Positions 1 through 62,658 of a stretch of 64,000 nt of DNA are shown piece after piece. The position numbers and the translations under genes were made by a program. Numbering within the stretch: the stretch's first letter is position 1; each line of letters begins with the position of its first letter. Where the stretch lies: positions 62,001-126,000 of the IMG/VR virus record IMGVR_UViG_3300035183_000733; one strand, 5' to 3'. The notes under the pieces were generated by a model. That model saw only the letters and a program-made list of their open reading frames with translations, was not told the origin of the DNA and ran no database searches.

Positions 1-98
1 CTATGTGGTTCAACTAACAAAGTAGCGCTTTCACCACATCCACAAACTATTATGTTTGATCCTTTATGTTTGTTTAATATGCTACCTAACTCTATCAT
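1..98 (-). CDS. Partial (5' end) MptE/DUF115-like or glycosyltransferase-like Rossmann protein
   Basis: Manual translation MIELGSILNKHKGSNIIVCGCGESATLLVEPH runs off the window edge; NKHKG..IIVCGCG.S resembles the N-terminus of this family; AT-rich. Confidence 0.5.
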   Translation of the reverse strand, partial: MIELGSILNKHKGSNIIVCGCGESATLLVEPH

Positions 99-1659: not shown

Positions 1660-1686
1660 TTAGGGGGCTTTTGTCGCCCCCCCTAA
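1660..1686 (-). terminator. Intrinsic terminator-like hairpin
   Basis: TTAGGGGGC...GCCCCCCCTAA inverted repeat, with a T-run on the - strand, downstream of 1697-2326. Confidence 0.6.
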
Positions 1687-1696
1687 TAAACTGGTT

Positions 1697-2326
1697 TTAA
1701 ATAGTGTAACCGCCACAGCGGATCTTCTTACCGCGGTGCGTGAAATCTGGAGCCGGCGCTTCATCGTACAGCACCACGAAATTCTGGTCTATGTACCTCC
1801 TGAAGTCTTCGGGCGTTATCAGGTTGATGTTATCGTAAGTGTTCAGCCCGAGCAGGTTGACGTAGAACTGCGCGAACTCACTGCAGATGAACCGGTCGGA
1901 CTTGCCGAGACCGGTAAGGTCTATTCCGGTCTTCTTTATTAAAGCGATGCGCAGCAGCAACGTGTTGTCGTACTTGACCTCCTTGCCGCCCCAATAAGAG
2001 AGAATCTCCTTTATGGCAGCCTCCATCTTTGCCTCGCCAACGCGAGGACGCATGATGCAGAAGTCGCTGTACCCGTCCATCCTCCTTGACAGCGGGACGC
2101 AAACGAGACCTCCTGACCACATGTCCAGCGTGAGCACGCGGTCCATGTCATCAGCCTTCCAAACAACCCCTATGTGGTTGTAGTATGCGCGGTCGAAATA
2201 CTGGATGGACCTCGATAGGAAGCTGCTTCCCCTATACAACACAAGGTCTCCAGTCTCAAAACTGTCCCTGTATTTTTTGTACTTCTCAGGTACGTCTTGG
2301 TTCTTGGAACCGATAAGCATTTGCAT
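1697..2326 (-). CDS. Permuted papain-like NlpC/P60 amidase (YiiX/YebB-like)
   Basis: GDLVLYRG, YNHIGVV (His), YD, FICSEF (Cys), ITPEDF in permuted order. Confidence 0.85.
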   Translation of the reverse strand: MQMLIGSKNQDVPEKYKKYRDSFETGDLVLYRGSSFLSRSIQYFDRAYYNHIGVVWKADDMDRVLTLDMWSGGLVCVPLSRRMDGYSDFCIMRPRVGEAKMEAAIKEILSYWGGKEVKYDNTLLLRIALIKKTGIDLTGLGKSDRFICSEFAQFYVNLLGLNTYDNINLITPEDFRRYIDQNFVVLYDEAPAPDFTHRGKKIRCGGYTI

Positions 2327-2346: not shown

Positions 2347-2997
2347 TTATCTAAAACGCATCTCGTTGTCCACGTTCTCGTAATTACCGTTTACAAATAT
2401 GTCGAGCAGCTCGTACATAAGCGAAGTGGTGTATCCGGGCATCTGAGCGAACCCGTTATTCGTGTAATTTATACCGAGCACTGGGTACGAACCGTTCTGC
2501 AGCCACAGGATAATGTGAGGAAGATTCGCATAGTAATAGTCATAGCACATCTCTTTGGTGACCATGTATATCATGGCCACATACGCCTCCGGAAGACGGA
2601 ATGATATTTTTTGGAACGCTGCGAATAGTCGCGATAGGCGAACCTCCCTTGTCCTCGCCGTTAGTATGTTCCAGTTGCGCTCATGCTCAGCTGGTGTGAA
2701 ATAGGTGTCCCACTCACCCTGACTTATGTCTGCGGGGTAGCGGTAGTGTTGCACGCATTTCTTACGATCTTCATACATGAGAGCGCCCCAGTCGGTAACA
2801 AGTATGTCGCGCAACGAATCTCTGAACACGCCATAGTCAAACTTCCTACCGTTCGTCATCGTCAGCAGCGTATCCACCGATGTTACATCGTCTTCATCCT
2901 GGGAAAAGACATGATTATTTGGAACCGTGTAATAGTAGTTCAAAATTCCTTGACTCGTGTCCTGGTGCGGTGTTGTTTTTAGTTTGGCTATCCTCAT
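2347..2997 (-). CDS. Hypothetical virion-associated protein; N-domain paralogous to 3015-4445
   Basis: ORF; MRIA...NYYYTVPNN..F....DDVTSVDTL aligns with MRIA...NYYIVPDN..F....TDVTSPETL. Confidence 0.7.
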   Translation of the reverse strand: MRIAKLKTTPHQDTSQGILNYYYTVPNNHVFSQDEDDVTSVDTLLTMTNGRKFDYGVFRDSLRDILVTDWGALMYEDRKKCVQHYRYPADISQGEWDTYFTPAEHERNWNILTARTREVRLSRLFAAFQKISFRLPEAYVAMIYMVTKEMCYDYYYANLPHIILWLQNGSYPVLGINYTNNGFAQMPGYTTSLMYELLDIFVNGNYENVDNEMRFR

Positions 2998-3014
2998 TTT
3001 AATAACTCTATGAT

Positions 3015-4445
3015 TTATTGTGCTTCCCACATATACACCTGCGCTGTTGTCGTTCCAGTTTCAGTCCATGCAATATCGAATGATGTTGATGTGACGTTCT
3101 GAATGACTCCCGAAATATAACTTCCCCCGCCTGTTGCTAAAAGTATTGCAAAGGTGGTTGAAGATAAACCCGCTTGAGTTGCGGTAATTGTTGCTCCGAA
3201 TCGTTGATATACACACCTGTTTCCGCTTGAGTTCCATATACCAATAGATGATGTGGTTGCGGTTGCAGAGCTGTTTGCGGTAAATGTACCATAACCATAA
3301 ATTCTTATGATAGCTGGAACCTTTCCGAGACCATGTGTGATTGTTGTTGTTTGGGTAGCAGCTGGAGAAGTACCAACACCTGCTGTTGATAACGGGGCTC
3401 CAGAGTAACCAGAAACCCCAGATACTCCGCTGAACCCACTTCGACCGCTGAACCCAGATATTCCGGATGAGCCACTCGTACCGGAGAATCCTGAAGTACC
3501 TGCTGCACCGTTTGTTCCCGAGAATCCTGAAGTCCCGCTATAACCAGAAAACCCAGAGACCCCTGAGTAACCCGACATGCCGCTGAATCCAAAGATCCCT
3601 GAGTAACCCGACAGCCCAGAAAAACCAGATGCGCCAGAGTATCCGGAGAACCCGCTTCGGCCGCTGGTACCAGAAACTCCGGAGTATCCGGAGAACCCTG
3701 AGGAACCATTTGTACCGTCAGTACCACTGAATCCAGATACTCCAGAATAACCGGAGAAACCACTAATGCCGGAGAAACCGGACACGCCCGACACGCCCGA
3801 AAAACCTTGGGTCCCGCTGAAACCAGAAGTACCAGAAATACCGATATTTCCCGAATAACCCGACACGCCACTGAATCCGCTCACTCCAGAGACCCCCGAC
3901 ACGCCAGATGATCCACTCGTGCCGCTTATACCAGAATAACCGGATAAGCCGAGTCCTGAATAACCAGAGACCCCGCTAAATCCAGAAGCAGCTTGTGCAT
4001 CCGCCAAATTTTGCGTTGTTATTAACTTTCCAGATGTACCAAGATCTGGTAGCTCTATCAGTACCGTCTGAGTCAAAGATCTTGGGTCGAATGATATTAC
4101 GTCTGGACGCCATACAAGATCCTGCATGAACTCGTATATCTCGGCCCTTGTAAAGTAGTCGAGAATATTCTCAGAGTTCGGCATAACAAAATGCCTTCTG
4201 TACTCGTATTTCATCTCAGCGGAAACGCCAGACCAATTCGGAATAACGTGCGAATTTGCCGAGTCCTTCCAGTCAAAATACTCCATGCGCTTAACTGAAA
4301 AGAACAAGTACAACGTCTCAGGCGAAGTGACGTCCGTGGCGCCATTGGTGGCAAAGTTATAGTTGTCCGGCACTATGTAATAGTTGCTCAACTGTCCGTC
4401 GACCGTAGATTGAATGCCGTTGCTATCTAATACTGCTATCCTCAT
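3015..4445 (-). CDS. Collagen-like (Ser-Gly-X) fibre protein
   Basis: Long [11 protein letters not shown] triplet tract; C-terminal beta domain with ITHGLGKVP motif seen in phage fibre domains. Confidence 0.8.
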   Translation of the reverse strand: MRIAVLDSNGIQSTVDGQLSNYYIVPDNYNFATNGATDVTSPETLYLFFSVKRMEYFDWKDSANSHVIPNWSGVSAEMKYEYRRHFVMPNSENILDYFTRAEIYEFMQDLVWRPDVISFDPRSLTQTVLIELPDLGTSGKLITTQNLADAQAASGFSGVSGYSGLGLSGYSGISGTSGSSGVSGVSGVSGFSGVSGYSGNIGISGTSGFSGTQGFSGVSGVSGFSGISGFSGYSGVSGFSGTDGTNGSSGFSGYSGVSGTSGRSGFSGYSGASGFSGLSGYSGIFGFSGMSGYSGVSGFSGYSGTSGFSGTNGAAGTSGFSGTSGSSGISGFSGRSGFSGVSGVSGYSGAPLSTAGVGTSPAATQTTTITHGLGKVPAIIRIYGYGTFTANSSATATTSSIGIWNSSGNRCVYQRFGATITATQAGLSSTTFAILLATGGGSYISGVIQNVTSTSFDIAWTETGTTTAQVYMWEAQ

Positions 4446-4447
4446 TT

Positions 4448-6541
4448 TTATATCCTTGTCATTGTAAAGTTCATGTACGATATAGTTATGTCCGCGGCGG
4501 ATGTTATATTCTGCACCCACAACTCTACGTAATCGTTAGTTGCAAGAGATACCAAGCAATTGACTCCAGCTGCGTATTGATCAGTAGAAGTCCTGAAGAA
4601 TGAATTTATCTGCGACTTTGTAACTCGCGCGCCGTTCTTGTAAACAAAGAAACTGAACGTCTCGTTGGCGGATGCAGATACAGACGACACGGACACGTTT
4701 ATTAAAAATTCTCTCGTTGCCGCACCAGTATAAGTCAGTCTTCCATTGGAATGCGTCACGTCTGCCGTAAGATCTCCGGCTGTAGTAGTTCCAGCCACTT
4801 TCAATGGAGTGGATGTTGCCGCGATTGCCGTTGCCGTTGCGTTGCCGTTTAAGTACATTTCTCCGTATGTCGATGCTGGCGAATTTCCAGAAAAACCGCT
4901 CGTGCCAGAGTAACCAGAATATCCGCTAACTCCAGAATAGCCAGAAACGCCAGAGAACCCAGATACACCACTAAAACCACTCACTCCAGAGCGGCCAGAA
5001 ACGCCAGAGAACCCAGATACACCACTAAAACCACTCACTCCAGAGTAACCTGAGGTTCCTGAGGTTCCGGAGTAACCCGAAAATCCCGACGTGCCGGAGT
5101 AACCCGAAAATCCCGACGTGCCGGAGTAACCCGAAAATCCCGACGTGCCGGAGTAACCCGATACGCCGGAGAATCCGCTCGTCCCAGAGTAACCAGATAT
5201 GCCGGAGGTTCCTGAGTATCCGCTTGTTCCTGAGTATCCGCTGAATCCGCTTGTTCCTGAGTATCCAGAAACGCCCGAGTATCCGCTCACACCGGAGTAT
5301 CCAGAAACGCCAGAGTATCCGCTCACACCGGAGTATCCAGAAACGCCCGAGAATCCTGATGTACCGCTGTAACCCGAAAATCCGGAAGTGCCGCTGTAAC
5401 CCGAAAATCCGGAAGTGCCGGAGCCCGAAAATCCGGAGGTGCCAGAGTAACCCGAAGTACCAGAAAAACCAGACACGCCTGAGTAGCCCGATAAACCTAT
5501 GCCAGAGTAACCGGAGATTCCAGACTCACCCTGCACGCCCTGCACGCCGTCAAGATTGACGGTCCACGAAGAATAAGTTCCCGAACCCTCCTCTGTTATG
5601 ACGAGGACTACGAGTTCTCCAGTGCCTGAGTTGTACGACTGCACCTCTCCTATGAAAAGATTTGTAGCGTTGTACGCGACGACAACTCCTTGTCCTACGG
5701 AATACGATAATCCCGACTCAACAAAAATTATTTGTATATTAGGAGACCCAACTGGTATTGTGAGCGAATCAGTTGATGATGTTAAATATCTGTCCGCTTT
5801 GCCAGAGAATCCCGAAAGCCCCGAGTAACCCGAGTAACCCGAGTAACCACTTACCCCAGAGTAGCCGGAGACCCCTGATACCCCGCTTGTACCTGAGTAA
5901 CCAGACTCACCAGAAGTGCCAGAAATTCCAGAAATGCCAGAGTATCCACTGAAACCTGATATGCCCGAATAACCAGACTCGCCTGATGTGCCGCTCGTTC
6001 CAGAGTAACCGCTGAATCCCGAGGTTCCGGAGTATCCGGAGACTCCAGAGTAACCCGAATAGCCCGAGACTCCAGAGTAACCCGAGAACCCGCTCACGCC
6101 AGAGGTTCCACTCGTTCCAGAGTAACCGCTAAAACCGCTCACTCCAGAGTGGCCAGAAACGCCAGAGTAACCCGAGAACCCACTAACGCCAGAGTAACCC
6201 GAGAACCCACTAACGCCAGAGTAACCCGAGATGCCAGAAAATCCAGATATTCCCGAGTGACCACTAACGCCAGAAAACCCACTAAAGCCCGACACACCTG
6301 TTACGAAATTGTAGAAATCGTCAGCTGAAGTAACAGAATATCCATTATAGTTGCCGGTCAATTTACCGTCATCTATAGCTGTTATTAGATCGCGTGAATT
6401 CTGTAATTCCGACAGCGAGTACTCCTCCAGCAGATCATGGTCGACGACTGGATGATAAAAAGTACGTTCACCGAGGTCATAAAGAACCACGATGTCCGGA
6501 CTTCCAACTCCTGTTGTCGTTATTTTTAAAAATGGCACCAT
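4448..6541 (-). CDS. Collagen-like (Ser-Gly-X) fibre protein with C1q/BclA-like head
   Basis: Two long SGX tracts separated by a beta domain; C-terminus [29 protein letters not shown] resembles a C1q/TNF jelly roll. Confidence 0.8.
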
Positions 6542-6546
6542 TTATA

Positions 6547-7632
6547 TTACCTTCTCTTTATTACTATTGTTCCCTTCGGTCTGTCTATGGATGCCCCAGT
6601 CATATACAGTTGAAGTAAATCGCCGGCGTTCACATCCACGTTGTATGTATCTGAGTAATTGCTCGTTTGTGCACCAGTTAAATTTATCACAGCTCCGGTA
6701 AGAGTACCGTTGTTCCGCACCTCTATGCTCCACGCGTTGCCGTTAACCGAGTTGCATGATGCGGACATTGCCACTATAGTGCCATTGTAAGGCATTACGA
6801 CCGGCGCCAGGTTCATGGGCACACCGTCCTCGTCCCTTAGGTATTGATTCGTTGTGTTTGCCGAGTTGCGAGATGCGCTAATGGTAAGCAAGCCGTAGCT
6901 CGGATCACCACTGAGGCCTGAGAATCCGCTCACTCCCGAATAACCGGAAACTCCACTGAATCCAGATACTCCCGATCCGCTCACTCCCGAATAACCACTT
7001 ACGCCAGAAAACCCCGAAACTCCACTGAATCCGGATACTCCAGAAAAACCGGACACGCCACTGAATCCAGATACTCCCAAGTATCCGCTGAACCCTGAGG
7101 TTCCTGAGAATCCGATCACTCCTGAGAATCCACTCACTCCTGAGTATCCAGATATGCCAGAAGTTCCGCTAAATCCACTAACCCCGCTTGTACCGGAGTA
7201 GCCGGAGAACCCCGATGTGCCTGAATAACCGGAGAACCCCGATATACCTGTAACTTTTTTCTCGCCAAGAGTGGTGAGTACCATCCATCCAGCACCGTCG
7301 TTGAATACGAGCTGCTCGTCCGGTTTAAGTATCACGCTTATCAATGTTCTGCTCGTACCCGTGTTGTAGAGCTCGACTGTTATCACCCTGTTGACCGTGT
7401 CGTTGTTGAACACGTTCACGTATTTTATGTTCCTGTATATGGATGCAGCAGGAGGTGCCACAGCCGTTACCGGTGTGTTGCCAGTGAGCACACCGTCATT
7501 GCCACCGGGCGTCATAACTGGTGTTGTCGACTCTATGTCATCGTACGCCGTTACAAATATCGGCTCGCTCGTCGTCGCCGCAGCGTCCGAGTATATCCTG
7601 AGAGATTTGTTTATGGTATCTAATCTTATCAT
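6547..7632 (-). CDS. Collagen-like (Ser-Gly-X) fibre protein, paralogue of 9901-10668
   Basis: N-terminus MIRLDTINKSLRIYSDA near-identical to the 9901 ORF; central SGX tract; C-terminal jelly roll with VNAGD. Confidence 0.8.
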   Translation of the reverse strand: MIRLDTINKSLRIYSDAAATTSEPIFVTAYDDIESTTPVMTPGGNDGVLTGNTPVTAVAPPAASIYRNIKYVNVFNNDTVNRVITVELYNTGTSRTLISVILKPDEQLVFNDGAGWMVLTTLGEKKVTGISGFSGYSGTSGFSGYSGTSGVSGFSGTSGISGYSGVSGFSGVIGFSGTSGFSGYLGVSGFSGVSGFSGVSGFSGVSGFSGVSGYSGVSGSGVSGFSGVSGYSGVSGFSGLSGDPSYGLLTISASRNSANTTNQYLRDEDGVPMNLAPVVMPYNGTIVAMSASCNSVNGNAWSIEVRNNGTLTGAVINLTGAQTSNYSDTYNVDVNAGDLLQLYMTGASIDRPKGTIVIKRR

Positions 7633-7778
7633 CAGCCTACCTGTATTGTAACTATTTCGGCCACTTGGGTGAACGTGTACGCAGAGCCGTCGAGGCTTAT
7701 GCCGACAATAGTGCCGGGGGTCGTGTCTGCGACCTCGAGCACAAATTCTGACGGATCAAAAACTATGTCGTTGATCAT
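7632..7778 (-). CDS. Small hypothetical protein (48 aa), not in ORF track
   Basis: MINDIVFDPSEFVLEVADTTPGTIVGISLDGSAYTFTQVAEIVTIQVG; fills the gap; TGATG overlap with the next start. Confidence 0.65.
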   Translation of the reverse strand: MINDIVFDPSEFVLEVADTTPGTIVGISLDGSAYTFTQVAEIVTIQVG

Positions 7779-7784
7779 GTTCTA

Positions 7785-9899
7785 TTACGCCTGCGTAAGC
7801 AGCGCCCTCACTTTAATTGAACCCGGCAGCGACGTAGCGACGTAACGGATGTAGTTGCCCACGACATCTGCCGAAGAGCTCCATGCGTTCCATACGTTGC
7901 CGTCGGTCGAGTACTGCCACGTTCCGAAGGCGGAAGCCGTCACTGTGTCGTCGACTATCGGCACGCCCGATACCGCGTTGTACAGCCTTATCCTCAGGTC
8001 AGGTATTGTGCCGCCCCATAGGGACGATTGCCTGTACCCGAAGGTGTTAGATGTCACGCTTGACTTGGCCACTGACGGCGTGTAATGAGAATCAGTTGTG
8101 TCGTCCTCGTAAACCACCGTAAGTCCCATTATCCTCGCGGGTATGCACGACTCGCCAAGCACTCTAAATTCGAACTTAAACTGTATAGACGTTGACGGCG
8201 ATATTGATGTTAGCGTGCCACTATCGTCAAGTAGAGTCCACGTACCAGAGTTATCAGATATTCCGGCAGTCCTGACGTAAGTCTTGAACGGCTCCGGATT
8301 CTTAACGAGATAATCATTACCCATCTTCTTAATCTCGTTCACGTAAACCCTATACAGCTTGGTGGCGTTCGACGTGTCCATGGCAGGTGTTATTAGGACC
8401 TGGTTAGTGGTTGACGTGTATGTCCAGTGTGCCTCTATCGGTATGGTGTATATCTGATTGGCCGTTGCTGCCGTACTGTGACGTGCCATATACAGTATTC
8501 CCCCCTCCGACCAAATAGAAAAAGTGGAAGCCTGTATTGAAGGGTGTGGTACTATAGTGGAATCCGCCGTAGACTGGTCGAGCTGTCTGTCGTCTGCGAG
8601 GAATATCAACTCGAACTGCGACGATATTGTGTTATATGTGGTGACGTAGCTGCGGGTACTTGTAGCACCAGTTGTCATTATCACGAGTCTGTCTATCAAG
8701 CTCGAGATCTCTACAGAAGACAACGCGGATGTCGCTGCGAATGTTGCAGTCCCGCCCGGCGGGACCTCGACCATTACGTCCGAGGTCCAGGTTGTGCTAC
8801 CGTTGGTTATGTTAGTCAACGCACACCTGTAAACCCTTGTGGTGGTTACAAAATATAAGCTCTCAACCCCACTTCCAGGACCGTGAGATAACGTACCAAT
8901 CCTGCCGTTATTGATCTGCGACATGGTTCCTGTCAGAACTTGGTTACCAGTCTTAATAATGTTAGTAGTAGTATCCTTGCCCGCGGCAAGCGTTAGCGCC
9001 ATTCTTATGTTATACACGAAGCAGATAGATCCTGTCGCATTCAGTACGTATACATACTGAGATGTCCAAGAAGTCCTCTGTCCTATGGCGGATCCTGCAG
9101 CTGTAGTATTAGTGACCACCGCCGCGTCGGCGAGCCAGTACACAGCCCTTATATTATCGACTGTGGTCGCGGCCGGTATCGTGGTACCGGACGTCGTAAA
9201 ATTTTCTATTCTCAATCCCTTTGTGACGAACAGACCACCATTGGTCGCAGTCGCATTAGTCGTAGACGTCACACACATCAAGTCTTGTATTACGTATGCA
9301 GTTCCACCTGGTATAGTTCCCGCAGAGGTCGTTAACGTTATGGAAGTATCGCCGCCGATGGCCGAGATTTCGTACCACGTGGTTATCGCAGTCGGATCGG
9401 TGGACCCGAATCCAATTCGGCATCCTACGCTCATCCTATCAGTTAGCCAGGCAGATCCGCTTCCGGTCACGGCCGTGCCTGATACAGATACTGTACCAGT
9501 TGTATACGACTCGCATATCATCCTGAACCCCCTTATGGTATGCGCGGTCGCGGTTGGATATGTCAGAGTTATGAAACCCCTCCAGTTGAACATTGACGTG
9601 ACCTTGTTGTACTCATACATAATTATCCTTCTCGTTGCAGCGGCAGCGGCGTTATCGGCAAGGAACACGTAATCGGTATTCGTGTCACAGTTTATTACGT
9701 GCGGGAACATCCCCGGTATCGCCGTGGATTGTTCCATTGGTCTTGCCACACCTATTATCGATGGACCTGCAAACTTGTCGGTAGGGTTGGATCCCGTGTA
9801 TTGCCTGATCTGCGTACCAACGTTGGTCTTGGTGGAGTCGTACGACGTTATAGGCGTCGTGGCTCCGGTGAATAAATGTTCTACTGCTTTCTTTGACAT
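7785..9899 (-). CDS. Large Thr/Ser-rich beta-structured virion (fibre/baseplate) protein
   Basis: 704-aa ORF inside the fibre cluster; GTVSVSGTAVTGSG motif; low charge. Confidence 0.65.
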   Translation of the reverse strand: MSKKAVEHLFTGATTPITSYDSTKTNVGTQIRQYTGSNPTDKFAGPSIIGVARPMEQSTAIPGMFPHVINCDTNTDYVFLADNAAAAATRRIIMYEYNKVTSMFNWRGFITLTYPTATAHTIRGFRMICESYTTGTVSVSGTAVTGSGSAWLTDRMSVGCRIGFGSTDPTAITTWYEISAIGGDTSITLTTSAGTIPGGTAYVIQDLMCVTSTTNATATNGGLFVTKGLRIENFTTSGTTIPAATTVDNIRAVYWLADAAVVTNTTAAGSAIGQRTSWTSQYVYVLNATGSICFVYNIRMALTLAAGKDTTTNIIKTGNQVLTGTMSQINNGRIGTLSHGPGSGVESLYFVTTTRVYRCALTNITNGSTTWTSDVMVEVPPGGTATFAATSALSSVEISSLIDRLVIMTTGATSTRSYVTTYNTISSQFELIFLADDRQLDQSTADSTIVPHPSIQASTFSIWSEGGILYMARHSTAATANQIYTIPIEAHWTYTSTTNQVLITPAMDTSNATKLYRVYVNEIKKMGNDYLVKNPEPFKTYVRTAGISDNSGTWTLLDDSGTLTSISPSTSIQFKFEFRVLGESCIPARIMGLTVVYEDDTTDSHYTPSVAKSSVTSNTFGYRQSSLWGGTIPDLRIRLYNAVSGVPIVDDTVTASAFGTWQYSTDGNVWNAWSSSADVVGNYIRYVATSLPGSIKVRALLTQA

Positions 9900-9900
9900 C

Positions 9901-10668
9901 TTAGTCTTTCATTATTTTGAGGTGCACAGTAACTCTCGTTATAGTTGATACTGAGTCGATGTTAAAGGCGAATATGTCGCCGGCATTGACCGTAGTATCC
10001 GTCCACCCCGTTAGGTTCGTGTTCCTGTTCTTTATCTGCGATACGAGGCGAGGCTTATCGCTGCCCGGTATAGAATCGGCGACAGTCGGCGGATAGTTGT
10101 CGTACGTGTCCTTCCACACGTCCACCTGGATGTCGCCTATTTGGTCGGCGAAAACTACCCACGCTACTATGGTACCAGAGAACGGCACGGTCACGTACGC
10201 TTTAGTTCCTATGGTCAGAGGGTTTGCTCCGTTGTCAAGACCGAACCCGATCGAACCGACCTTTATGTTCTGCCCAGATTCCCCGGTAACTCGTATCTCA
10301 CCAAGAGAGTTCATTACCATCCATCCGGCGGCGTCGCTGAACACGAGCTCTTCCCCTATCTCGAGGTAAACCTTCATCAGCGTACGTTGGTCGACTCCAT
10401 TGAGGAGCTCAATAGTTACCGTATGCGGTGCCGTATCGACATTAGCTACACTTATGTACTTTATGTTCCTGTAGAACGGCGACACAGGCGACGAAACTGC
10501 AGTAACAGGCGTTGTACCATTCAACGATCCGTCCTGACTCCCTGGAGTGAACGCCGGATTGACCACGCGTATATCGTCATACGACGTTACGAATACAGGC
10601 TCGCTCGTCGTCGCCGTAGCGTCCGAGTATATCCTAATGCTCTTCGAGGTCGTATCTAAACGGATCAT
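9901..10668 (-). CDS. Virion fibre-associated protein (stalk-less paralogue of 6547-7632)
   Basis: Shares N-domain and C-domain (VPFSGTIVAW...VNAGD) with 6547-7632 but has no SGX tract. Confidence 0.7.
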   Translation of the reverse strand: MIRLDTTSKSIRIYSDATATTSEPVFVTSYDDIRVVNPAFTPGSQDGSLNGTTPVTAVSSPVSPFYRNIKYISVANVDTAPHTVTIELLNGVDQRTLMKVYLEIGEELVFSDAAGWMVMNSLGEIRVTGESGQNIKVGSIGFGLDNGANPLTIGTKAYVTVPFSGTIVAWVVFADQIGDIQVDVWKDTYDNYPPTVADSIPGSDKPRLVSQIKNRNTNLTGWTDTTVNAGDIFAFNIDSVSTITRVTVHLKIMKD

Positions 10669-10683
10669 ATTTTATATATTTTC

Positions 10684-12222
10684 TTATAGTCCGAGGCTGT
10701 TTATTATCATAGCGAGTATACCAGCATCAAATCCGCTGAAACCAGAGGCGCCGGAGAACCCGCTCACGCCGGAGAACCCGCTCACGCCGGAGAACCCTGA
10801 GGCGCCGAAGTATCCGCTGAAACCAGAGGTGCCCGATAAACCGCTCGTCCCACTCTCTCCCGAGAAACCGCTCGTCCCACTCTCTCCCGAGAATCCTGAG
10901 GCTCCGCTGAATCCTGAGACTCCTGAGTAACCGCTCAAACCAGAGGTGCCCGAGAAACCAGAGGCGCCCGAGAAACCGCTCACCCCGCTGAAACCCGAAA
11001 ATCCAGAGGCTCCAACGAAAGACACCGGCGAGTGAACGTGTGTAGCGTTTGTAAACCCTTCAACGTATAGACTCACCGTTATATTAGACACAGAAGTGGT
11101 CTTAGCATAATACTTGACGAGTATCCTATCCGTGAGGTCGAGGTCGAACTCGCCCTGTAATATCTCTTTAGAATAGAGTGCTACGACCGCGCCGTTTATC
11201 TCGGCAGTCTCAGCACTGAATAAAGGTGTCTCCGTTCCGACGAAATCCCTCTTGTACACGCGTATAACTATTCGCGTGTCTCCAACTGGGTTGTCGACCG
11301 AAGAGTAAGTATCGAATATCCACGAACCACCAGATATGTAAAGCTGGTCTGGGTTAGACGGTAAGGTCAAGAATTGCTGGATAAGAACCTCGCCTGTCGT
11401 ATTATTACACACCGCGGTGAATGAACTCTCTGGATCTATAGAATCGGGATTGATATTCAATTGCCTGAAACCAACTATATCAGAGGCATCGTTCCTCAGG
11501 TAGTATAATGCACCACCGGCTACACCATTGACGCCGGAAAATCCGGAAGCGCCGTCAACACCAGAAAATCCAGAAAATCCAGAGACTCCGGACATACCAT
11601 CCTGTCCATAGTAACCTGATGAACCTGATATTCCGCTGAACCCGGACGTCCCGCTCGCTCCGCTCACACCCGATATGCCACTTGCGCCGGACTCACCAGA
11701 GAAACCCGACGTACCGGAGAATCCTGATACTCCGCTGAATCCGCTCACACCACTGAACCCTGATACGCCCGATGATCCACTCGTGCCGCTTAGACCAGAT
11801 GTGCCGGAAAACCCACTCGTTCCGGAAGTACCGCTGAATCCAGACGTGCCGGAGAATCCTGATACTCCGCTGAATCCGCTCACACCGCTGAACCCTGATA
11901 CGCCCGAGAAACCACTCACGCCCGAAGTACCACTCAATCCGGACGTTCCGGAAATACCGGAAGTGCCGGAGAACCCGGAGGTTCCACTGAATCCTGAAGT
12001 TCCACTCGCGCCGACAAAACTGCCGCTATCGAGCCACTTGACCCCGTCGCCAGTGGTCATAAGTATTTGGCCGGATATACCGGACGAGCCGTCGCCGTCG
12101 ACGAGCGTCGAATTAAGCGCCAGAGGTCCGGACATTGCATCACCCGCCTTGTTCAACTTTGAATCAAGATCGGCCTGCAGTCCATCTATCTGTCGAATGG
12201 GTATTTGACTTTTTGGTGTCAT
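10684..12222 (-). CDS. Collagen-like (Ser-Gly-X) fibre protein
   Basis: [21 protein letters not shown] tail-fibre motif; two SGX tracts flanking a globular domain. Confidence 0.8.
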
Positions 12223-18296: not shown

Positions 18297-18908
18297 TTAT
18301 TTATTTGTGCTTGGGTTGTCTTTCTTTATTATTACGTGTCCTTGCTGCTTTGTTTCGGCAGGTTTATCGCCTTTAAAATCAAGGAAGAACTCGATAGATT
18401 GCGGGGCACTCATCGGCTGCACAGGCACGATGTCGAGCCCTATGGTTTGCGCCTGGACGCGCCTGGACGCGCCTGACCATTGCAGCTTCACCTTGCGTGG
18501 GAATACCTGGCGCCATGCCTTCATGAACCGCAACACGTACTTGTTGGTGTACCACGAGTTGTTAACGTGAAGAACGAACGCGCCCCAGTTTGTCTTCGGC
18601 ACCGGAACGTACTCGGTGTTGGTGCTGAATATGCCCCACGAGCTGTCAAAAATCTTTACGACCATCCTCGTCCAAGTGCTGTCGTCCTGGTTCCACCTGT
18701 AAATCCTCGCGGACTTGCACATTTCGACGAACACGTGTTCCCTGTACTTGTACTCCCAGCGCTTGCCGGTTTTAGTCACGTACACGAAGTTGTCAGAATC
18801 CGCGTCTGCGTCCAGTGTCATAGGATTACTCGTCATCGGGCAATACAGACCTGTCGGCAGTATTACTCTGCGGTGGAACTTTAGGTATTTCTCTGCGATG
18901 TTGCTCAT
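18297..18908 (-). CDS. Hypothetical protein carrying a capsid-protein-like motif
   Basis: C-terminal VQAQTIGLDIVPVQPMSAP..FFLDF matches the MCP segment VAAKTVGFDIVPVIPMPGP..TYLDY. Confidence 0.7.
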   Translation of the reverse strand: MSNIAEKYLKFHRRVILPTGLYCPMTSNPMTLDADADSDNFVYVTKTGKRWEYKYREHVFVEMCKSARIYRWNQDDSTWTRMVVKIFDSSWGIFSTNTEYVPVPKTNWGAFVLHVNNSWYTNKYVLRFMKAWRQVFPRKVKLQWSGASRRVQAQTIGLDIVPVQPMSAPQSIEFFLDFKGDKPAETKQQGHVIIKKDNPSTNK

Positions 18909-20146
18909 GCGAATGGGTCGTAATCATTTAGGTTGTCCTCCGACTTATCGTCATCCGACTTCTTCAAGTCGGTGACGTCCGTCAAACGCTGAAGTCCAAC
19001 CGGTATCTCGGTGTGTCCCATGGCCACCATGATCCTATTTATCGGGTCAAGAATAGTTTTAGAGAACTGCTCGTCGTAATCTATGGCAGGCGCGAACTCG
19101 TACGGATACATACCCGGTATGTAAGCGAACACGTTCTCCTCCGCGTTCTTGTGCTTGGTTTTTGCGTAGTAGAACTTGACCTTGTCGCCAGCCCTGATGA
19201 GCTGGTACTTAGACTTGTACTTGGACTGATTAAGGGTGAAGTTGTAGTAACCAGAAGCGCGGACGTGAATAGGTGTCTGCTTGCCAGTCTCGAATGCAGT
19301 TGTGTCATTCAGGATGTACTTCCCGTAGTCGTTGATGCTCCGGCCCATCGAGATCTTCTCAGGGTCCGCCATCTTGAACTCCTCCTTTATTTTTCGGAGA
19401 ATCGTCACCATCTCGTTCTTGTTCAAAGACTTCTTCTTAGTGAACACATATTTCACCAGCTCCTTGAGCTTCTCGCGAGCGAACGCCGGTGTCGAACTCT
19501 GCGCCAACTCAACTCCCTTAAATATAATGTGAGACAGAGACTCCATGGCTATGCCGGACTCCCACACCTCGTTTATCAGGTATTTCTTCTTAGCGAGCCA
19601 TATACCGGACTCGGAGATGTTTTCAAGCTCAAAGTCCATGTGGTTCTTGGTGTTCCACTTCTCAGCGTACTTATCGAAGCACTTGTTGAGATAGGAGGCG
19701 AGCCTGTGCTCGTTGATTTCGAGTATGAGTTGCTTTGGGTCCCCGGTCCAATTACACGACTCCACAACCTCCTCAAACGACACGTAGCAAGAATCCGTAT
19801 CCGAATAGATGTTCACTGGGCGCTTCACCTGCCTAACCTCGTAGTCTATGCCAAGCTTCGCGTGAAGCTCCGTATCCTTATGCCAAAATTCGTTGAAGTA
19901 CTGGTTGAGCCTCTCCTCAGCGTACTTGATGAGGTTTTGACCCTGCAACGTGATGGTCTCCGCAACCTCAGGGTTGAAGCACACCAGCCACTTGTTACCG
20001 AGCGCCCCGTATATGGAGTTGATGGTTAGCTTGATGGCCTGTTCCTCGTTTTTCCATTCGTTGGAGAGCTGCTTCATGCGCTCTATCTCCGCCTTGATTT
20101 CTTCTACGGTGGCGGTGGAAGGATCTATAGTAGTGTATGTAAACAT
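18905..20146 (-). CDS. Family B DNA polymerase, C-terminal subunit (gp43B-like)
   Basis: KLTINSIYG (motif B), YSDTDS (motif C), KKKY, KGVELAQSSTP; no exonuclease or motif A. Confidence 0.92.
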   Translation of the reverse strand: MFTYTTIDPSTATVEEIKAEIERMKQLSNEWKNEEQAIKLTINSIYGALGNKWLVCFNPEVAETITLQGQNLIKYAEERLNQYFNEFWHKDTELHAKLGIDYEVRQVKRPVNIYSDTDSCYVSFEEVVESCNWTGDPKQLILEINEHRLASYLNKCFDKYAEKWNTKNHMDFELENISESGIWLAKKKYLINEVWESGIAMESLSHIIFKGVELAQSSTPAFAREKLKELVKYVFTKKKSLNKNEMVTILRKIKEEFKMADPEKISMGRSINDYGKYILNDTTAFETGKQTPIHVRASGYYNFTLNQSKYKSKYQLIRAGDKVKFYYAKTKHKNAEENVFAYIPGMYPYEFAPAIDYDEQFSKTILDPINRIMVAMGHTEIPVGLQRLTDVTDLKKSDDDKSEDNLNDYDPFA

Positions 20147-20184
20147 CGAGAATATTTTGTTAATTTTATGGTGTTCAAATTGAT

Positions 20185-20592
20185 TTGTTTCTCGTGGATT
20201 TCCAACCAACAGAAGATGAAAACTATCTTACGCACCGGATGACGTCAGGTCGCGTTGAGATAGGTGTGTACCGCGTAATTTTCGGGTACAGGGTCAGAGC
20301 CGGCTACGTCGGCTCAGGGTTTTACCACATAGACTACTGTTGCGGGGCAGACCAAGATTGGATTAGACGGGTGTATGCTGCCGTGCTTACCGTGCTTACT
20401 GCACGCGAAGAGCAAGATGCCTTCAAGGGGTTCCCGTCACAGACATACAAGCCAATGTCAGAGGATTATGTCTGTTTCGTAAGCCTGTGCCAAATGATGA
20501 AGGGCGTCCCACCGGTGAAAGTCGAAATTAACGTCCCGCCTGTGGATAAGAACAAAATATTCAGCATTGAGTCGATGTTCAATGTTCAATGA
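20185..20592 (+). CDS. Hypothetical protein
   Basis: 135-aa ORF; start uncertain (TTG 20185 or GTG 20194). Confidence 0.55.
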   Translation: MFLVDFQPTEDENYLTHRMTSGRVEIGVYRVIFGYRVRAGYVGSGFYHIDYCCGADQDWIRRVYAAVLTVLTAREEQDAFKGFPSQTYKPMSEDYVCFVSLCQMMKGVPPVKVEINVPPVDKNKIFSIESMFNVQ

Positions 20593-44277: not shown

Positions 44278-44967
44278 ATGAACAATAGAGACGAATTCAG
44301 AAAGTATGCCGTCAAACACAGGGGCATCAGTTCAAACACGTTTGATTCCTACACGAAGCACGGCATCAACAGCAGCATAACACCGTACATCATCGAGGAG
44401 CGTCAGCTCAACGTGGCAGAGATGGACGTGTTCTCGCGTCTCATGATGGACCGCATCATCTTCCTCGGAACGGGGATATACGACGAGGTCGCGAACATCA
44501 TACAGGCGCAGCTCCTCTTCCTGCAGTCGCTCGACGGAAAGAAGGACATCCAAATTTACATCAACTCACCAGGCGGCAGCGTATACGCGGGTCTCGGAAT
44601 ATACGACACCATGCAGTACATCACGCCCGACGTAGCGACCATCTGCACCGGGATGGCAGCATCCATGGGAGCGGTACTTATGTGTGCAGGTGCCAGGGGC
44701 AAGCGCTCGGCACTAAAGCACTCGAGGATAATGATACACCAGCCGCTCGGAGGCGCCGAGGGGCAGGCTTCGGACATCGAGATCACCGCCAGAGAGATCC
44801 AGATTCTCAAGAAGGAACTGTACGAGATAATCGCGAACCACTCGGGTCAGACGTACGACAAGGTGTGGACCGACTCGGACCGTGACTACTGGATGACATC
44901 CGGCCAAGCCAAGGAGTACGGAATGATCGATGAGATTCTTATAGCTGACCCTTCTGCTAAGAAGTAA
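44278..44967 (+). CDS. clpP: ATP-dependent Clp protease proteolytic subunit
   Basis: MDVFSRLMMDRIIFLG, YINSPGG, GMAASMG (Ser), MIHQPLGG (His), DRDYWM (Asp). Confidence 0.97.
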   Translation: MNNRDEFRKYAVKHRGISSNTFDSYTKHGINSSITPYIIEERQLNVAEMDVFSRLMMDRIIFLGTGIYDEVANIIQAQLLFLQSLDGKKDIQIYINSPGGSVYAGLGIYDTMQYITPDVATICTGMAASMGAVLMCAGARGKRSALKHSRIMIHQPLGGAEGQASDIEITAREIQILKKELYEIIANHSGQTYDKVWTDSDRDYWMTSGQAKEYGMIDEILIADPSAKK

Positions 44968-47685: not shown

Positions 47686-49200
47686 TTAGATGATACCTGA
47701 GGTAGGCACCTGGATCGTGAAAGTGAAGTACATTGTCTGTGGGTGGAATCCAGCTGACACGAGGGCGTAGCGAGACTTCACAGCGATCTTCGGAGACATA
47801 GTGCCTTCAGAGATTGTCTGGATAGACTCAGCCATCATGTACGGCATGAACTTCAGACCTGGCTCGTCGTCTGCGCCCTTACGGCCGACAAGTACGCGAG
47901 TGTCAGTCCACTTCATGTTCTGGTCAACGTACACAGTCATACCAGCGAGTGATCCTACTGGGTAGAGAGCACCGTTGTTCTGGCTTGCGGTGTTCGCGAA
48001 CGGAGCTGGCTGGAACTGGCTGATGTCCTGGATCGCCGTAGCAATCTGAGAGTTACATACAACGAAGTTCGCAGGTCCACGACGACCACGGTTTGCTACT
48101 ACGTTAGCGGCAGCAAGTATGCGGCTGAAGATTCTCCTCTGGAACGTCTGGAGGTTCTCGTACGTACCAACCGTAGGCAGAGCCGTAAGGTTGAGGTCGA
48201 GCACCTGTCCTTCAGTTGCAGCGAACTCAGTAGCGTTCTGCGTACCAAGACCGAATGCGGTCACGAGGATGTGTTTGTTGATGTGCTGTGATACATCGTT
48301 AACGAGCGAGTTCTCAACCATCGACACAACGTCGATACCGAACTGCTTGTTAAGGTCTTGTATCTGCTCAGTAGTTACCTGCGCAGCAAGCTGGTAGGTC
48401 TCAGTCTCAACGAACTTGGTGAAAGTCTTGAGGTTAGTCGTCCTGTAGTAGGTAGACTCACCAACTTCACGGGTCATTGGACCAGAGTCGTTAGCATCTG
48501 CGTAAGGACCGGTCCAGTTAGCTGTGTCAGTGTCACCTGCACCAGCGAAACCTTGGATGTGATCTTCGAGCATTGCTACGAGGGCAGCAGCGTTAGTAGC
48601 TGCAACCGGAGCTGCGTCAGTTGTTACTGTCGCGCCAACCACACCAATAACCTGAGCTACAGAGATGGTAGACGGAGTAGATGCACCAACCTTGAAGATT
48701 GGGTAACCGTCGATCCTCGACTTACCAACGAAGGTAAGGGCAAGGGTACCAGCACCTGAAGTTGCGGTGTACGATGTACCGTTAGTCCACGTACCTGTCG
48801 CGTTGAACTTGATCAGGAGTGGCTTATGGTCAGCGTTGTCGATACGTCCACCTGCGTAAACGTAATCGAGGTAGGTGAGAACACCTGTTGGGCCTGGCAT
48901 CGGGATAACCGGAACGATGTCGAAACCTACAGTCTTAGCTGCTACCTGGATAGCGAGCGGAAGAAGTGAAGGGAACTTGTCGCCGGAACCGTTAGCGGAC
49001 CTGGTCGGAGCCAAAGGCTGGCCCATACCGTTAAGCGCGTCGAGAGTGCCGTATCCAGCGTGGATAGCAGACTCATTGAGCGAGTGGTAGTGGCAGTACT
49101 TAGAAAGCCATTCTACTTTGTTCGAGTCTTTGATATTAGTCTTCTCGTTGATAACCGGAGACCAAGTTTCAAAAACCTCTTGTTCGTTGATCATTTTCAT
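47686..49200 (-). CDS. Major capsid protein (T4 gp23-like)
   Basis: WSPVI, DIVPVIPMPGPTG, TTEQIQDL, RRGPANFVV, VG.LAG..VYVD, FMPY, MSPKIAVKSRYAL. Confidence 0.95.
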   Translation of the reverse strand: MKMINEQEVFETWSPVINEKTNIKDSNKVEWLSKYCHYHSLNESAIHAGYGTLDALNGMGQPLAPTRSANGSGDKFPSLLPLAIQVAAKTVGFDIVPVIPMPGPTGVLTYLDYVYAGGRIDNADHKPLLIKFNATGTWTNGTSYTATSGAGTLALTFVGKSRIDGYPIFKVGASTPSTISVAQVIGVVGATVTTDAAPVAATNAAALVAMLEDHIQGFAGAGDTDTANWTGPYADANDSGPMTREVGESTYYRTTNLKTFTKFVETETYQLAAQVTTEQIQDLNKQFGIDVVSMVENSLVNDVSQHINKHILVTAFGLGTQNATEFAATEGQVLDLNLTALPTVGTYENLQTFQRRIFSRILAAANVVANRGRRGPANFVVCNSQIATAIQDISQFQPAPFANTASQNNGALYPVGSLAGMTVYVDQNMKWTDTRVLVGRKGADDEPGLKFMPYMMAESIQTISEGTMSPKIAVKSRYALVSAGFHPQTMYFTFTIQVPTSGII

Positions 49201-62527: not shown

Positions 62528-62658
62528 GCGTTTATTCCCCTTGCGTTTAATTTCTTGATAACAATCTTCTCCTCATCGCGTAGCTTGGCGGCCTCCTCGT
62601 ATTTTTGATTGCGCATTGTGCGGTTCTTTTCCTCCTTTATTCTGCGCAGCTCGAGCAT
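62524..62658 (-). CDS. Stand-alone UVR (UvrB/C, ClpC-type) coiled-coil peptide, 44 aa (not in ORF track)
   Basis: MLELRRIKEEKNRTMRNQKYEEAAKLRDEEK...; overlaps both neighbours' stop/start codons. Confidence 0.65.
   Translation of the reverse strand: MLELRRIKEEKNRTMRNQKYEEAAKLRDEEKIVIKKLNARGINA

What the first reader, a model, noticed from the sequence alone, without database searches (positions are those of the whole stretch)
3015..12222. Four proline-free (Ser-Gly-X)n collagen-like fibre genes
Seen: hundreds of residues of strict SG[F/Y/V/T/I] triplets in four genes, with synonymous codons varied, so selection acts on the protein pattern. One ends in a C1q/BclA-like head. Known: Gly every third residue fits a collagen triple helix or polyglycine-II bundles, but typical collagens use Pro or charged residues. 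Inference: this is an unusual Ser/aromatic-stabilised fibre, possibly O-glycosylated; a glycosyltransferase-like gene begins at the window's left edge.
Basis: partly seen in the sequence, partly recalled or inferred. Interest (0 to 1): 0.6.

Follow-up and report, generated by a model that had tools for sequence, protein, structure and literature searches.

The report
Serine-rich collagen-like phage fibre genes
A 374-kb uncultured phage from a microbial mat carries a block of fibre genes whose long shafts are collagen-type Gly-X-Ser repeats with no proline or charge; this is an ordinary kind of phage fibre made from an unusual, common but unstudied collagen sequence.

Summary
Four minus-strand genes (3015-4445, 4448-6541, 6547-7632, 10684-12222) hold 320 Gly-X-Y triplets. 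Y is Ser in 294. X is Phe/Tyr in 43% and Val/Thr/Ile in 43%. Pro is never at X, and all Ser and Gly codons are used.

The window lies in a 373,759-bp jumbo-phage record. All four genes pass Pfam Collagen and match PHROG tail-fibre families. The C-terminus of the 697-aa protein folds (pLDDT 95) into a TNF/C1q/BclA-like jelly roll. The N- and C-terminal modules are shared with tract-less paralogues next door and with other metagenomic fibre proteins.

My reading is homotrimeric virion fibres: an anchor, a collagen-like shaft of about 33-110 nm, and a receptor-binding tip.

The composition differs sharply from published viral and bacterial collagens. It is not rare, though: at least 862 protein clusters carry similar tracts, and 71 of the first 120 IMG/VR pattern hits share it.

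O-glycosylation is unsupported. The left-edge gene has only a weak sialyltransferase-like hit, and the next gene is an AAA ATPase.

Verdict: a new member of a known kind, with moderate interest for collagen biophysics.

The parts
10684..12222 (-). g4, 512 aa. Layout: N-terminal 70-aa fibre-type segment, Gly-X-Ser tract (11509-12012, 56 triplets), 165-aa middle domain (11014-11508), second tract (10726-11013, 32 triplets), short hydrophobic C-terminal tail.
   Evidence: Pfam Collagen 130 bits; PHROG 6320/5073 tail fibre. The middle domain recurs inside other metagenomic Gly-X-Ser proteins.
9901..10668 (-). gB, 255 aa, with no tract. Its N-terminal 128 aa are 59% identical to the g3 N-terminus. 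Its C-terminal domain is a beta-sandwich tip.
   Evidence: paralogy; PHROG 10330/35197 virion structural. Fold pLDDT 91; best structural matches are the phage 7-7-1 tail-fibre C-terminus (Z 9.9), YomS and XepA. In BFVD the same domain caps 'Collagen triple helix repeat' phage proteins, TM 0.9+.
7785..9899 (-). gA, 704 aa, a Thr-rich protein of unknown fold. It is the conserved core of the block.
   Evidence: No Pfam, PHROG or NCBIfam hit. 62-65% identical homologues sit in IMG/VR phage contigs of 518,809 and 362,532 bp. Atlas neighbours are all viral.
6547..7632 (-). g3, 361 aa. Layout: anchor domain (7249-7632), Gly-X-Ser tract (6901-7248, 38 triplets with one G-S-G break), 117-aa C-terminal head (6550-6900).
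   Evidence: Pfam Collagen 58.5 bits. The head gives a sub-threshold BclA_C hit, E 0.0056, and is 49% identical to a 635-kb uncultured phage. Purifying selection is seen against a wastewater relative.
4448..6541 (-). g2, 697 aa. Layout: 81-aa N-terminus, tract 1 (5795-6298, 56 triplets), 82-aa knob (5549-5794), tract 2 (4880-5548, 73 triplets with two one-residue breaks), TNF/C1q/BclA-like head (4451-4879).
   Evidence: Pfam Collagen 181 bits. Head fold pLDDT 95.1 with Foldseek matches. 45 sequence homologues of the head sit mostly on non-collagen stalks.
3015..4445 (-). g1, 476 aa. Layout: N-terminal domain (3984-4445), tract (3393-3983, 65 triplets with one G-L-G break), 125-aa Thr/Ser-rich C-terminal domain (3018-3392).
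   Evidence: Pfam Collagen 97.8 bits. The N-domain is 33% identical to the next gene's product.
2347..3030 (-). Tract-less paralogue of the g1 N-terminal domain (227-aa ORF; the likely start is the ATG at 2997).
   Evidence: BLASTP 33% identity over 105 aa, E 3e-9; no family hit.
1697..2326 (-). Last gene of the co-directional block, 209 aa, with a weak YiiX-type permuted papain-like signal.
   Evidence: NCBIfam NF007458 E 0.0023, far below cut-off; PHROG 1128 E 2e-10.
1662..1682 (-). Terminator-like GC-rich hairpin plus T-run that closes the g4-to-209-aa gene block.
   Evidence: It is the strongest site of the scan, but the total number of sites equals the shuffled expectation.
1..98 (-). 5' end of a 199-aa gene that runs off the window's left edge.
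   Evidence: PHROG 4603 'alpha-2,3-sialyltransferase' E 1.3e-6; Pfam MptE-like E 0.011, below cut-off; no NCBIfam hit.

Best explanation
The block from 12222 down to about 1662 is a co-directional fibre-gene cassette of an uncultured jumbo phage. g1, g2, g3 and g4 encode homotrimeric virion fibres built from three kinds of module. (1) An N-terminal anchor domain. It is shared with a tract-less paralogue next door (g3 with gB, g1 with the 227-aa ORF), so pairs of proteins probably dock at the same kind of site. (2) One or two rod-like shafts of (Gly-X-Ser)n that I infer to be collagen-type, parallel, one-residue-staggered triple helices. At 0.286 nm per residue they would span about 56 nm (g1), 48+64 nm (g2), 33 nm (g3) and 48+27 nm (g4). 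(3) A globular distal domain that trimerises, sets the register and binds the host surface; in g2 this is a TNF/C1q/BclA-type jelly roll. Within the shaft, Gly is buried on the axis and Ser at Y offers hydroxyls for hydration or hydrogen bonding. At X, bulky aromatic residues alternate with beta-branched Val/Thr/Ile, which would put alternating rings of side chains on the rod surface. Shown: the gene structure, the composition, the family matches, the head fold, the module sharing, purifying selection and the wide viral distribution. Inferred: the trimeric state, the triple-helical conformation, virion location (tail versus head) and the receptor-binding role.
For: Strict Gly periodicity over runs of up to 61 triplets with diverse codons. 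Pfam Collagen above cut-off in all four genes. PHROG tail-fibre families at E 1e-19 to 1e-58. The g2 head folds with pLDDT 95 as a TNF/C1q-like jelly roll; this is my classification from its matches to BclA, ExsF, EDA-A1 and cyanophage A-1(L)/A4 fibre parts, and that the fold is obligately trimeric and often sits C-terminal to collagen stalks rests on my own knowledge. The gB tip domain matches the phage 7-7-1 tail-fibre C-terminus (Z 9.9) and caps collagen-repeat phage proteins in BFVD. Modules are shuffled among many Gly-X-Ser proteins. Breaks in the tracts are single-residue G-x-G breaks. One of them is filled by an extra Tyr codon in a wastewater relative, keeping the frame of the repeat. 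33 synonymous against 7 non-synonymous differences from that relative. Aromatic-aromatic neighbours at X are half the shuffled expectation: 28 against 56 +/- 4.2, with 0 of 2000 shuffles as low. The genome is a phage: major capsid protein, prohead protease, UvsX, topoisomerase II, ligase.
Against: No trimer or triple-helix prediction could be made. No solved structure has this composition; PDB matches come only through the Gly period. From my own memory of the Brodsky host-guest scale, Phe/Tyr at X and Ser at Y are among the less favourable residues, and the usual stabilisers (imino acids, charge pairs, Thr/Gln) are missing, so the expected stability is low. PHROG and Pfam scores are driven by the repeat itself. 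No tail or baseplate genes adjoin the block, so the virion location is not fixed. There are no proteomic or RNA data. The closest relatives of gA lack such tracts within the 6.7-10 kb of flank fetched.
Confidence: 0.72

Rival explanations
1. The tracts are not collagen triple helices. They adopt another glycine-dependent assembly, such as stacked or bundled polyproline-II helices or a beta-solenoid, which happens to need Gly every third residue.
For: The composition lacks every known triple-helix stabiliser (against PMC3368898 Table 4). The two-triplet alternation of aromatic and beta-branched residues could reflect a packing rule of a different fold. No structure of this sequence class is solved.
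Against: The unbroken runs of 168-183 residues have no turn-forming or Gly-Gly segments. By my own knowledge, known PPII bundles are made of short helices joined by turns. A three-residue period does not fit a beta-sheet's two-residue alternation. The tracts are flanked by a trimeric TNF-like head, as in C1q, BclA and EDA. The breaks are of the one-residue G-x-G type.
Confidence: 0.1
2. The tracts are flexible, largely disordered Ser/Gly-rich tethers that only space the globular domains, with no regular structure.
For: Ser/Gly-rich sequences are often disordered. Predicted triple-helix propensity is low (my own knowledge). Tract lengths vary and single-codon indels are tolerated.
Against: A tether needs neither Gly at exactly every third position over 61 triplets nor 86% aromatic/beta-branched residues at one position and 92% Ser at the other. 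It also would not need non-random neighbour rules. The same strict pattern recurs in hundreds of independent phage proteins.
Confidence: 0.1
3. The shafts are triple helices that depend on O-glycosylation of the Y-position serines for stability or masking, as proposed by the first reader. The model is Thr glycosylation in BclA and in worm cuticle collagen.
For: About 92% Ser at the solvent-exposed Y position. The phage encodes three GT2 domains and a weakly sialyltransferase/Maf-like gene about 1.6 kb downstream of the block's end.
Against: The GT2 genes are about 175 kb away. The left-edge gene's hits are below curated cut-offs and it lies beyond a terminator-like site and an AAA ATPase gene. 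No GT1, NeuB or CMP-sugar synthetase genes were found. There are no glycoproteomic data.
Confidence: 0.2
4. The proteins are capsid (head) fibres or decoration whiskers, not tail fibres.
For: The block is not next to tail or baseplate genes. The gB-type beta-sandwich also resembles capsid cement and decoration proteins: KHP40 Z 7.9, Pam1 Z 7.7, GP4 TM 0.56. PHROG 10330 is filed under 'head and packaging'.
Against: The best structural match of the gB tip is a tail-fibre C-terminus (Z 9.9), followed by YomS and a baseplate-cup chain. The TNF-like head matches phage tail-fibre and spike tips. The top PHROG hits are tail-fibre families. The fifth Gly-X-Ser gene sits beside DUF2793 fibre and tailspike-like genes.
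Confidence: 0.2

Closest known systems
Phage collagen-like tail-fibre / side-tail proteins (Smith et al. 1998 'Bacteriophage collagen'; E. coli O157 prophage EPclA/B, PMC3368898; cyanophage P-SSM2 orf028, PMC1079782; PHROG 6320, 5073, 1806)
   Same: A phage-encoded (Gly-X-Y)n shaft flanked by non-collagen anchor and tip domains. Pfam Collagen is positive. Tract length varies by triplet indels. For P-SSM2, Ser/Thr/Pro in X/Y was already noted.
   Different: EPclPs have 48% Pro and 36% Asp/Glu at X, 31% Lys/Arg at Y, and no Phe/Tyr/Trp at all. Here Pro at X is 0, charge is about 2%, aromatics are 43% of X and Ser is 92% of Y. There are no PfN/PfC/Pf2 domains.
BclA of the Bacillus exosporium and C1q/TNF-family collagens (C1q, adiponectin, collagen VIII/X, EDA-A1)
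   Same: A collagen-like stalk followed directly by a C-terminal TNF/C1q-type jelly roll that trimerises. The g2 head matches BclA (3tyj, 1wck), ExsF/BxpB and EDA-A1 at TM 0.6-0.7.
   Different: There is no sequence-level membership: no Pfam C1q or BclA_C hit for g2, and only 17 bits against a cut-off of 38 for g3. The BclA stalk is Gly-Pro-Thr and is glycosylated (my own knowledge). g2 has two stalks separated by a knob. The protein is viral, not a spore or animal protein.
Streptococcal Scl1/Scl2 and Legionella Lcl collagen-like adhesins
   Same: Prokaryotic-world collagen repeats without hydroxyproline. The NCBIfam models align to the tracts.
   Different: Scores of 44-110 bits against cut-offs of 325-500. 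There is no LPXTG or secretion signal. The Scl tracts are rich in charged residues and Pro.
Polyproline-II (polyglycine-II) bundle domains (snow-flea antifreeze, phage S16 gp38 tip)
   Same: Gly at every third residue in an extended left-handed conformation; found in a phage adhesin.
   Different: Those are compact bundles of short helices joined by turns and rich in Gly-Gly (my own knowledge). Here single unbroken runs reach 183 residues with bulky X residues.

Membership tests
Collagen triple-helix repeat proteins (Pfam PF01391) | Gly at every third residue over long uninterrupted runs | tested here: met
   Runs of 61, 56+59, 31 and 56+32 triplets; 320 triplets in all.
Collagen triple-helix repeat proteins (Pfam PF01391) | Profile score above the curated gathering cut-off (27.2 bits) | tested here: met
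   97.8, 181.1, 58.5 and 130.2 bits.
Collagen triple-helix repeat proteins (Pfam PF01391) | Known stabilisers at X/Y (imino acids, Lys/Arg-Asp/Glu pairs, or Thr/Gln hydration) | tested here: not met
   Pro 0 at X and 2 of 320 at Y. Charged residues about 2%. Thr only at X (16%). Gln 3 of 320 at Y. Published groups have 22-48% Pro at X.
Collagen triple-helix repeat proteins (Pfam PF01391) | Three chains form a staggered triple helix | not testable with these tools
Phage collagen-like tail fibres (PHROG 6320/5073/1806) | Profile match to the family | tested here: met
   E 8.5e-19 to 5.6e-58 for PHROG 6320. The match is driven largely by the repeat.
Phage collagen-like tail fibres (PHROG 6320/5073/1806) | Modular anchor-shaft-tip architecture with exchangeable tips | tested here: met
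   g3 and gB share an anchor (59% identity). The gB tip, g4 middle domain and g2 knob recur in other Gly-X-Ser proteins. The g2 head recurs on 45 other stalks.
Phage collagen-like tail fibres (PHROG 6320/5073/1806) | Presence in the virion, attached to tail or baseplate | not testable with these tools
   The phage is uncultured. There is no proteome and no RNA run holds the locus.
C1q/TNF-like headed collagens (BclA type) | C-terminal TNF/C1q jelly-roll fold directly after the collagen tract | tested here: met
   g2 residues 550-697: pLDDT 95.1. Foldseek probability 1.0, TM 0.60-0.69 to ExsF, BxpB, BclA, EDA-A1 and TNF ligands.
C1q/TNF-like headed collagens (BclA type) | Sequence-family membership (Pfam C1q or BclA_C above cut-off) | tested here: not met
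   No such hit for g2. g3 head gives BclA_C 17 bits against a cut-off of 38. phmmer against PDB gives nothing.
C1q/TNF-like headed collagens (BclA type) | O-glycosylated collagen-like region | not tested
   Only indirect evidence: GT2 domains far away, a weak sialyltransferase-like neighbour, and no NeuB or CMP-synthetase.
Scl/Lcl bacterial collagen-like adhesins (NCBIfam NF038329, NF046116, NF038330) | Score above the equivalog cut-off | tested here: not met
   37-110 bits against cut-offs of 325-500.
Polyproline-II bundle domains | Short PPII segments joined by regular turns or Gly-Gly motifs (definition from my own knowledge) | tested here: not met
   Unbroken 168-183-residue runs. The only breaks are four isolated single-residue G-x-G sites.

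The most novel reading that the evidence does not exclude
(Gly-aromatic/beta-branched-Ser)n may be a distinct natural class of rod-forming sequence that is largely confined to phages. It would form a stable triple helix, or a related PPII assembly, without imino acids, charge pairs or hydroxylation. Stability would come instead from alternating aromatic and beta-branched rings at X and serine hydroxyls at Y, possibly with serine glycosylation. If so, it would extend the known sequence rules for collagen folding and give a new proline-free scaffold.
Probability: 0.25. Interest if true: 0.6.

Novelty: new member of a known kind. Interest (0 to 1): 0.38.

Why it matters
For phage biology this is a routine but clear example of modular receptor-binding fibres in a jumbo phage. 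Paralogues appear with and without a shaft on the same anchor, which suggests the same docking site presents tips at different reaches.

For collagen science the interest lies in the composition. The tracts have no proline, almost no charge, 92% Ser at Y, and aromatic residues alternating with beta-branched residues at X. That is outside every group in the published composition tables (PMC3368898), yet it recurs in hundreds of viral proteins, so it must fold into something functional.

No structure or stability measurement exists for this class. A single recombinant construct could therefore settle whether a triple helix can be built this way.

Tried and rejected
1. A trimer prediction of a 102-residue stretch of the g2 tract (3 copies) came back 'NOT FOLDED' on likeness to a listed protein class. 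The likeness is probably to the streptococcal Scl and Legionella Lcl adhesin models seen.

2. Megablast, blastn and tblastn against 50,697 GenBank phage records gave nothing for the block, for gA or for the g4 tract DNA. The g3 protein gave only one hit, to its head domain. BLAST's low-complexity filter hides the tracts in protein mode.

3. Profile-profile comparison of the gB-tip and g2-head alignments showed no relation, so I dropped the idea that all the tips are one family.

4. Searches for NeuB, CMP-sugar synthetase and GT1 in the whole phage were negative.

5. Literature searches for Gly-X-Ser or serine-rich collagen found only lipase motifs. I found no paper describing this composition class, but most subscription literature is not covered.

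6. Cluster look-ups of NCBI-sourced homologues returned no names.

7. Relatives of gA (62-65% identical) were checked for tracts in the fetched flanks (6.7 kb to 10 kb a side). None were found, so the tracts are not a conserved feature of this phage lineage's block.

Full report
**What is in the sequence**

Between 3015 and 12222 all long ORFs lie on the minus strand. Four of them carry long Gly-X-Y runs:
- g1, 3015-4445
- g2, 4448-6541
- g3, 6547-7632
- g4, 10684-12222

The runs hold 65, 129, 38 and 88 triplets, and the longest unbroken run is 61 triplets. Of the 320 triplets:
- Y is Ser in 294.
- X is Phe 82, Tyr 56, Val 67, Thr 51 and Ile 18.
- Pro never occupies X. It occupies Y only twice, each time in the last triplet of a run.
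- Charged residues fill about 2% of the X and Y positions.

All six Ser codons and all four Gly codons are used in near-genomic proportions. Tandem Repeats Finder reports only local 18-54-bp arrays, most of them 61-83% matching.

Two genes in the span carry no tract: gA (7785-9899) and gB (9901-10668). g1 starts at the ATG at 4445, two bases after the g2 stop, and the protein database holds that 476-aa form.

**Context**

The window is bases 62,001-126,000 of a 373,759-bp IMG/VR virus record. The record encodes a T4-type major capsid protein, a prohead protease, UvsX, both topoisomerase II subunits, an NAD-dependent ligase and DNA polymerase parts, so it is a jumbo tailed phage. Two microbial-mat metagenome runs hold the locus almost completely.

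The genes g4, gB, gA, g3, g2, g1, a 227-aa ORF and a 209-aa ORF follow each other with gaps of 0-150 nt. The block ends at the strongest terminator-like hairpin of the region (1682-1662). After it comes an AAA ATPase gene (400-1599).

The gene crossing the left edge is 199 aa and starts at window 98. Its evidence for being a glycosyltransferase is thin:
- a weak PHROG 'alpha-2,3-sialyltransferase' hit (E 1.3e-6)
- a sub-threshold Pfam MptE-like hit
- no NCBIfam hit

In the whole phage I found three GT2 domains at 248-251 kb. I found no GT1, NeuB or CMP-sugar synthetase genes.

A fifth Gly-X-Ser gene (974 aa) lies at about 360-363 kb, beside a DUF2793 fibre-like gene and a tailspike-like gene. 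A short proline-containing collagen run lies at 164.9 kb.

**Families and folds**

All four proteins pass the Pfam Collagen cut-off (58-181 bits against 27.2). Their best PHROG matches are tail-fibre families 6320 and 5073. NCBIfam's Scl and Lcl adhesin models align to the tracts but score far below their cut-offs.

g2 head (residues 550-697):
- Folded with an alignment of 36 homologues, it gives pLDDT 95.1.
- Foldseek places it, at probability 1.0 and TM 0.60-0.69, with ExsF/BxpB, the BclA C-terminal domain, EDA-A1, other TNF ligands, the cyanophage A-1(L) short-tail-fibre binding domain, a cyanophage A4 tail chain and the phi812 spike knob.
- From these matches I class it as a TNF/C1q-type jelly roll; that the fold is trimeric is my own knowledge.
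- It has no sequence-level family membership.
- Its 45 sequence homologues (35-45% identical) almost all sit on non-collagen stalks, so the head is a mobile tip module.

gB C-terminal domain:
- It folds with pLDDT 91 into a beta-sandwich.
- Its best solved matches are the C-terminus of the Agrobacterium phage 7-7-1 tail fibre (Z 9.9), YomS, a Klebsiella phage baseplate-cup chain and XepA.
- In BFVD the same domain caps 'Collagen triple helix repeat' proteins of uncultured phages, with TM above 0.9.

The g3 head gives only a sub-threshold BclA_C hit.

**Modularity**

- The g3 and gB N-terminal 128 residues are 59% identical.
- The g1 N-domain is 33% identical to the next ORF.
- The gB tip, the g4 middle domain, the g2 knob and the g3 anchor all recur in other metagenomic Gly-X-Ser proteins.
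- Relatives of gA (62-65% identical), on phage contigs of 518,809 and 362,532 bp, keep a gB-like gene. They have no Gly-X-Y run in the flanks fetched, which reach 6.7 kb to 10 kb a side.

The shafts are therefore an exchangeable module, not a lineage trait.

**How common the composition is**

A word-seeded search with the g1 tract found at least 862 protein clusters at E below 1e-10 among the 8,000 candidates scored. Among the best 120:
- 109 have Ser in at least 60% of Y positions.
- 86 have at most 0.03 Pro per triplet.
- 25 meet strict criteria: Ser at least 80%, Pro at most 3%, aromatic X at least 30%.

After translation I asked for at least 20 triplets with a Ser-rich, Pro-poor, aromatic-X composition. 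71 of 120 viral loci met this, against only 3 of 120 genome loci.

The published table of collagen compositions (PMC3368898) gives, for viral collagens, 22% Pro and 35% Asp/Glu at X and 38% Lys/Arg at Y. It also notes that aromatics are absent from the E. coli prophage collagens. So the class is common in viromes and largely viral, but it lies outside the groups that have been described. My literature searches found no paper on it. The nearest remark is that P-SSM2 orf028 has Gly-X-Y with Pro, Ser or Thr.

**Internal rules of the tract**

- Aromatic-aromatic neighbours at successive X positions occur 28 times, against 56 +/- 4.2 in shuffles.
- Identical neighbours occur 20 times, against 53 +/- 6.2.
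- None of 2,000 shuffles was as low for either count.
- The same bias holds in 118 metagenomic homologues.

In effect, aromatic residues alternate with Val/Thr/Ile. Ancient 18-bp duplications could contribute to this pattern.

The only breaks are four single-residue G-x-G sites.

**Reality and selection**

Contigs of the two source runs cover 3015-7632 without a single difference. They break only inside the second g2 tract (4962-5347), where a perfect 27-bp x 3.5 repeat lies. Copy number there is the one soft spot of the assembly.

Wastewater runs hold a relative about 92% identical over 6234-7059. Of the 40 best-supported differences, 33 are synonymous. That relative also carries an extra codon which, read on the coding strand, turns the g3 G-S-G break into a regular G-Y-S triplet.

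**Mechanism**

I read g1-g4 as homotrimeric virion fibres made of an anchor, a collagen-type shaft and a distal binding domain. At 0.286 nm per residue the shafts would be about 56 nm (g1), 48+64 nm (g2), 33 nm (g3) and 48+27 nm (g4).

The trimeric head would nucleate the helix and set its register, as in C1q, BclA and EDA (established knowledge of those families). Paralogue pairs that share an anchor would place different tips at different distances from the same docking site.

The triple helix itself is inferred and not shown. Imino-poor helices are expected to be of the looser 10/3 type (PMC7824840). From my own memory of the host-guest scale, Phe/Tyr at X and Ser at Y are unfavourable. Stability must then come from tract length, the flanking trimer domains, side-chain packing or a modification.

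Aromatic residues are reported to drive lateral association of triple-helical peptides (Kar et al. 2009, listed). That could matter for bundling of the fibres.

**Rivals**

- Another PPII-type assembly.
- Disordered tethers.
- Glycosylation-dependent helices.
- Head fibres instead of tail fibres.

None is excluded. The evidence for and against each is given in the Rival explanations section.

**Limits**

No proteomic or RNA evidence exists. PHROG and Pfam matches rest mainly on the repeat. The host is unknown.

**Verdict**

This is a real, well-supported fibre-gene cassette and a new member of the known kind 'phage collagen-like fibre proteins'. The noteworthy point is the proline-free Gly-(aromatic/beta-branched)-Ser composition, which is widespread in phages but structurally uncharacterised.

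Noticed in passing
window 56169-57596 (-) and 18905-20209 (-): The family-B DNA polymerase appears split into two genes about 36 kb apart. The first matches PHROG 262 positions 109-494 and the second matches positions 490-839.
   Followed up: no
L017:5052-7976 (+), genome C1 about 360,052-362,976, outside the window: A fifth Gly-X-Ser collagen-like gene (974 aa, about 45 triplets in short runs). It is followed by a DUF2793 fibre-like gene (829 aa), a 363-aa ORF and a tailspike-like gene (988 aa), forming a second fibre cluster.
   Followed up: partly
genome C1:164864-164962 (-), outside the window: A short conventional collagen run of 11 triplets with Pro and Gln (G-P-P, G-I-Q ...). The same phage therefore also encodes a proline-containing collagen motif.
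   Followed up: no
window 6970-6978 (g3 residues 219-221): The one-residue G-S-G break in g3 is a regular G-Y-S triplet in a wastewater relative about 92% identical, which has one extra codon. Single-codon indels therefore create or remove breaks in the tract.
   Followed up: yes
window 4962-5347 (second tract of g2): Logan contigs of both source runs fragment here, around a perfect 27-bp x 3.5 repeat (5067-5161). The repeat copy number in the assembly is the least certain part of the locus.
   Followed up: partly
window 1697-2326 (-): The last gene of the fibre block (209 aa) has a weak YiiX-type permuted papain-like signal (NCBIfam E 0.0023; PHROG 1128 E 2e-10). It may be a fibre-associated hydrolase or amidase.
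   Followed up: no
L016:9663-11090 (-), genome C1 about 53.7-55.1 kb; window 62658-63575 (-): Metabolic genes in the phage: a glutamate-synthase-domain protein (Pfam PF01645, E 1.8e-76) and an NAD synthetase (PHROG 11189, E 5e-68).
   Followed up: no
window 44278-44967 (+) and 49219-51207 (-): Two different head-maturation-protease-like genes (PHROG 94 and PHROG 207) lie near the major capsid gene at 47686-49200.
   Followed up: no
genome C1:248434-250682 (-), outside the window: Three GT2 glycosyltransferase domains in two ORFs of about 665 aa. These are the only clear glycosyltransferases found in the phage.
   Followed up: no
L028 (Gallionella sp. MAG contig, 47.5 kb): One of the few 'bacterial' contigs with the strict Gly-X-Ser composition (248 triplets, 85% Ser at Y). 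It may be a phage or prophage contig binned with the MAG, and so a possible host lead.
   Followed up: no
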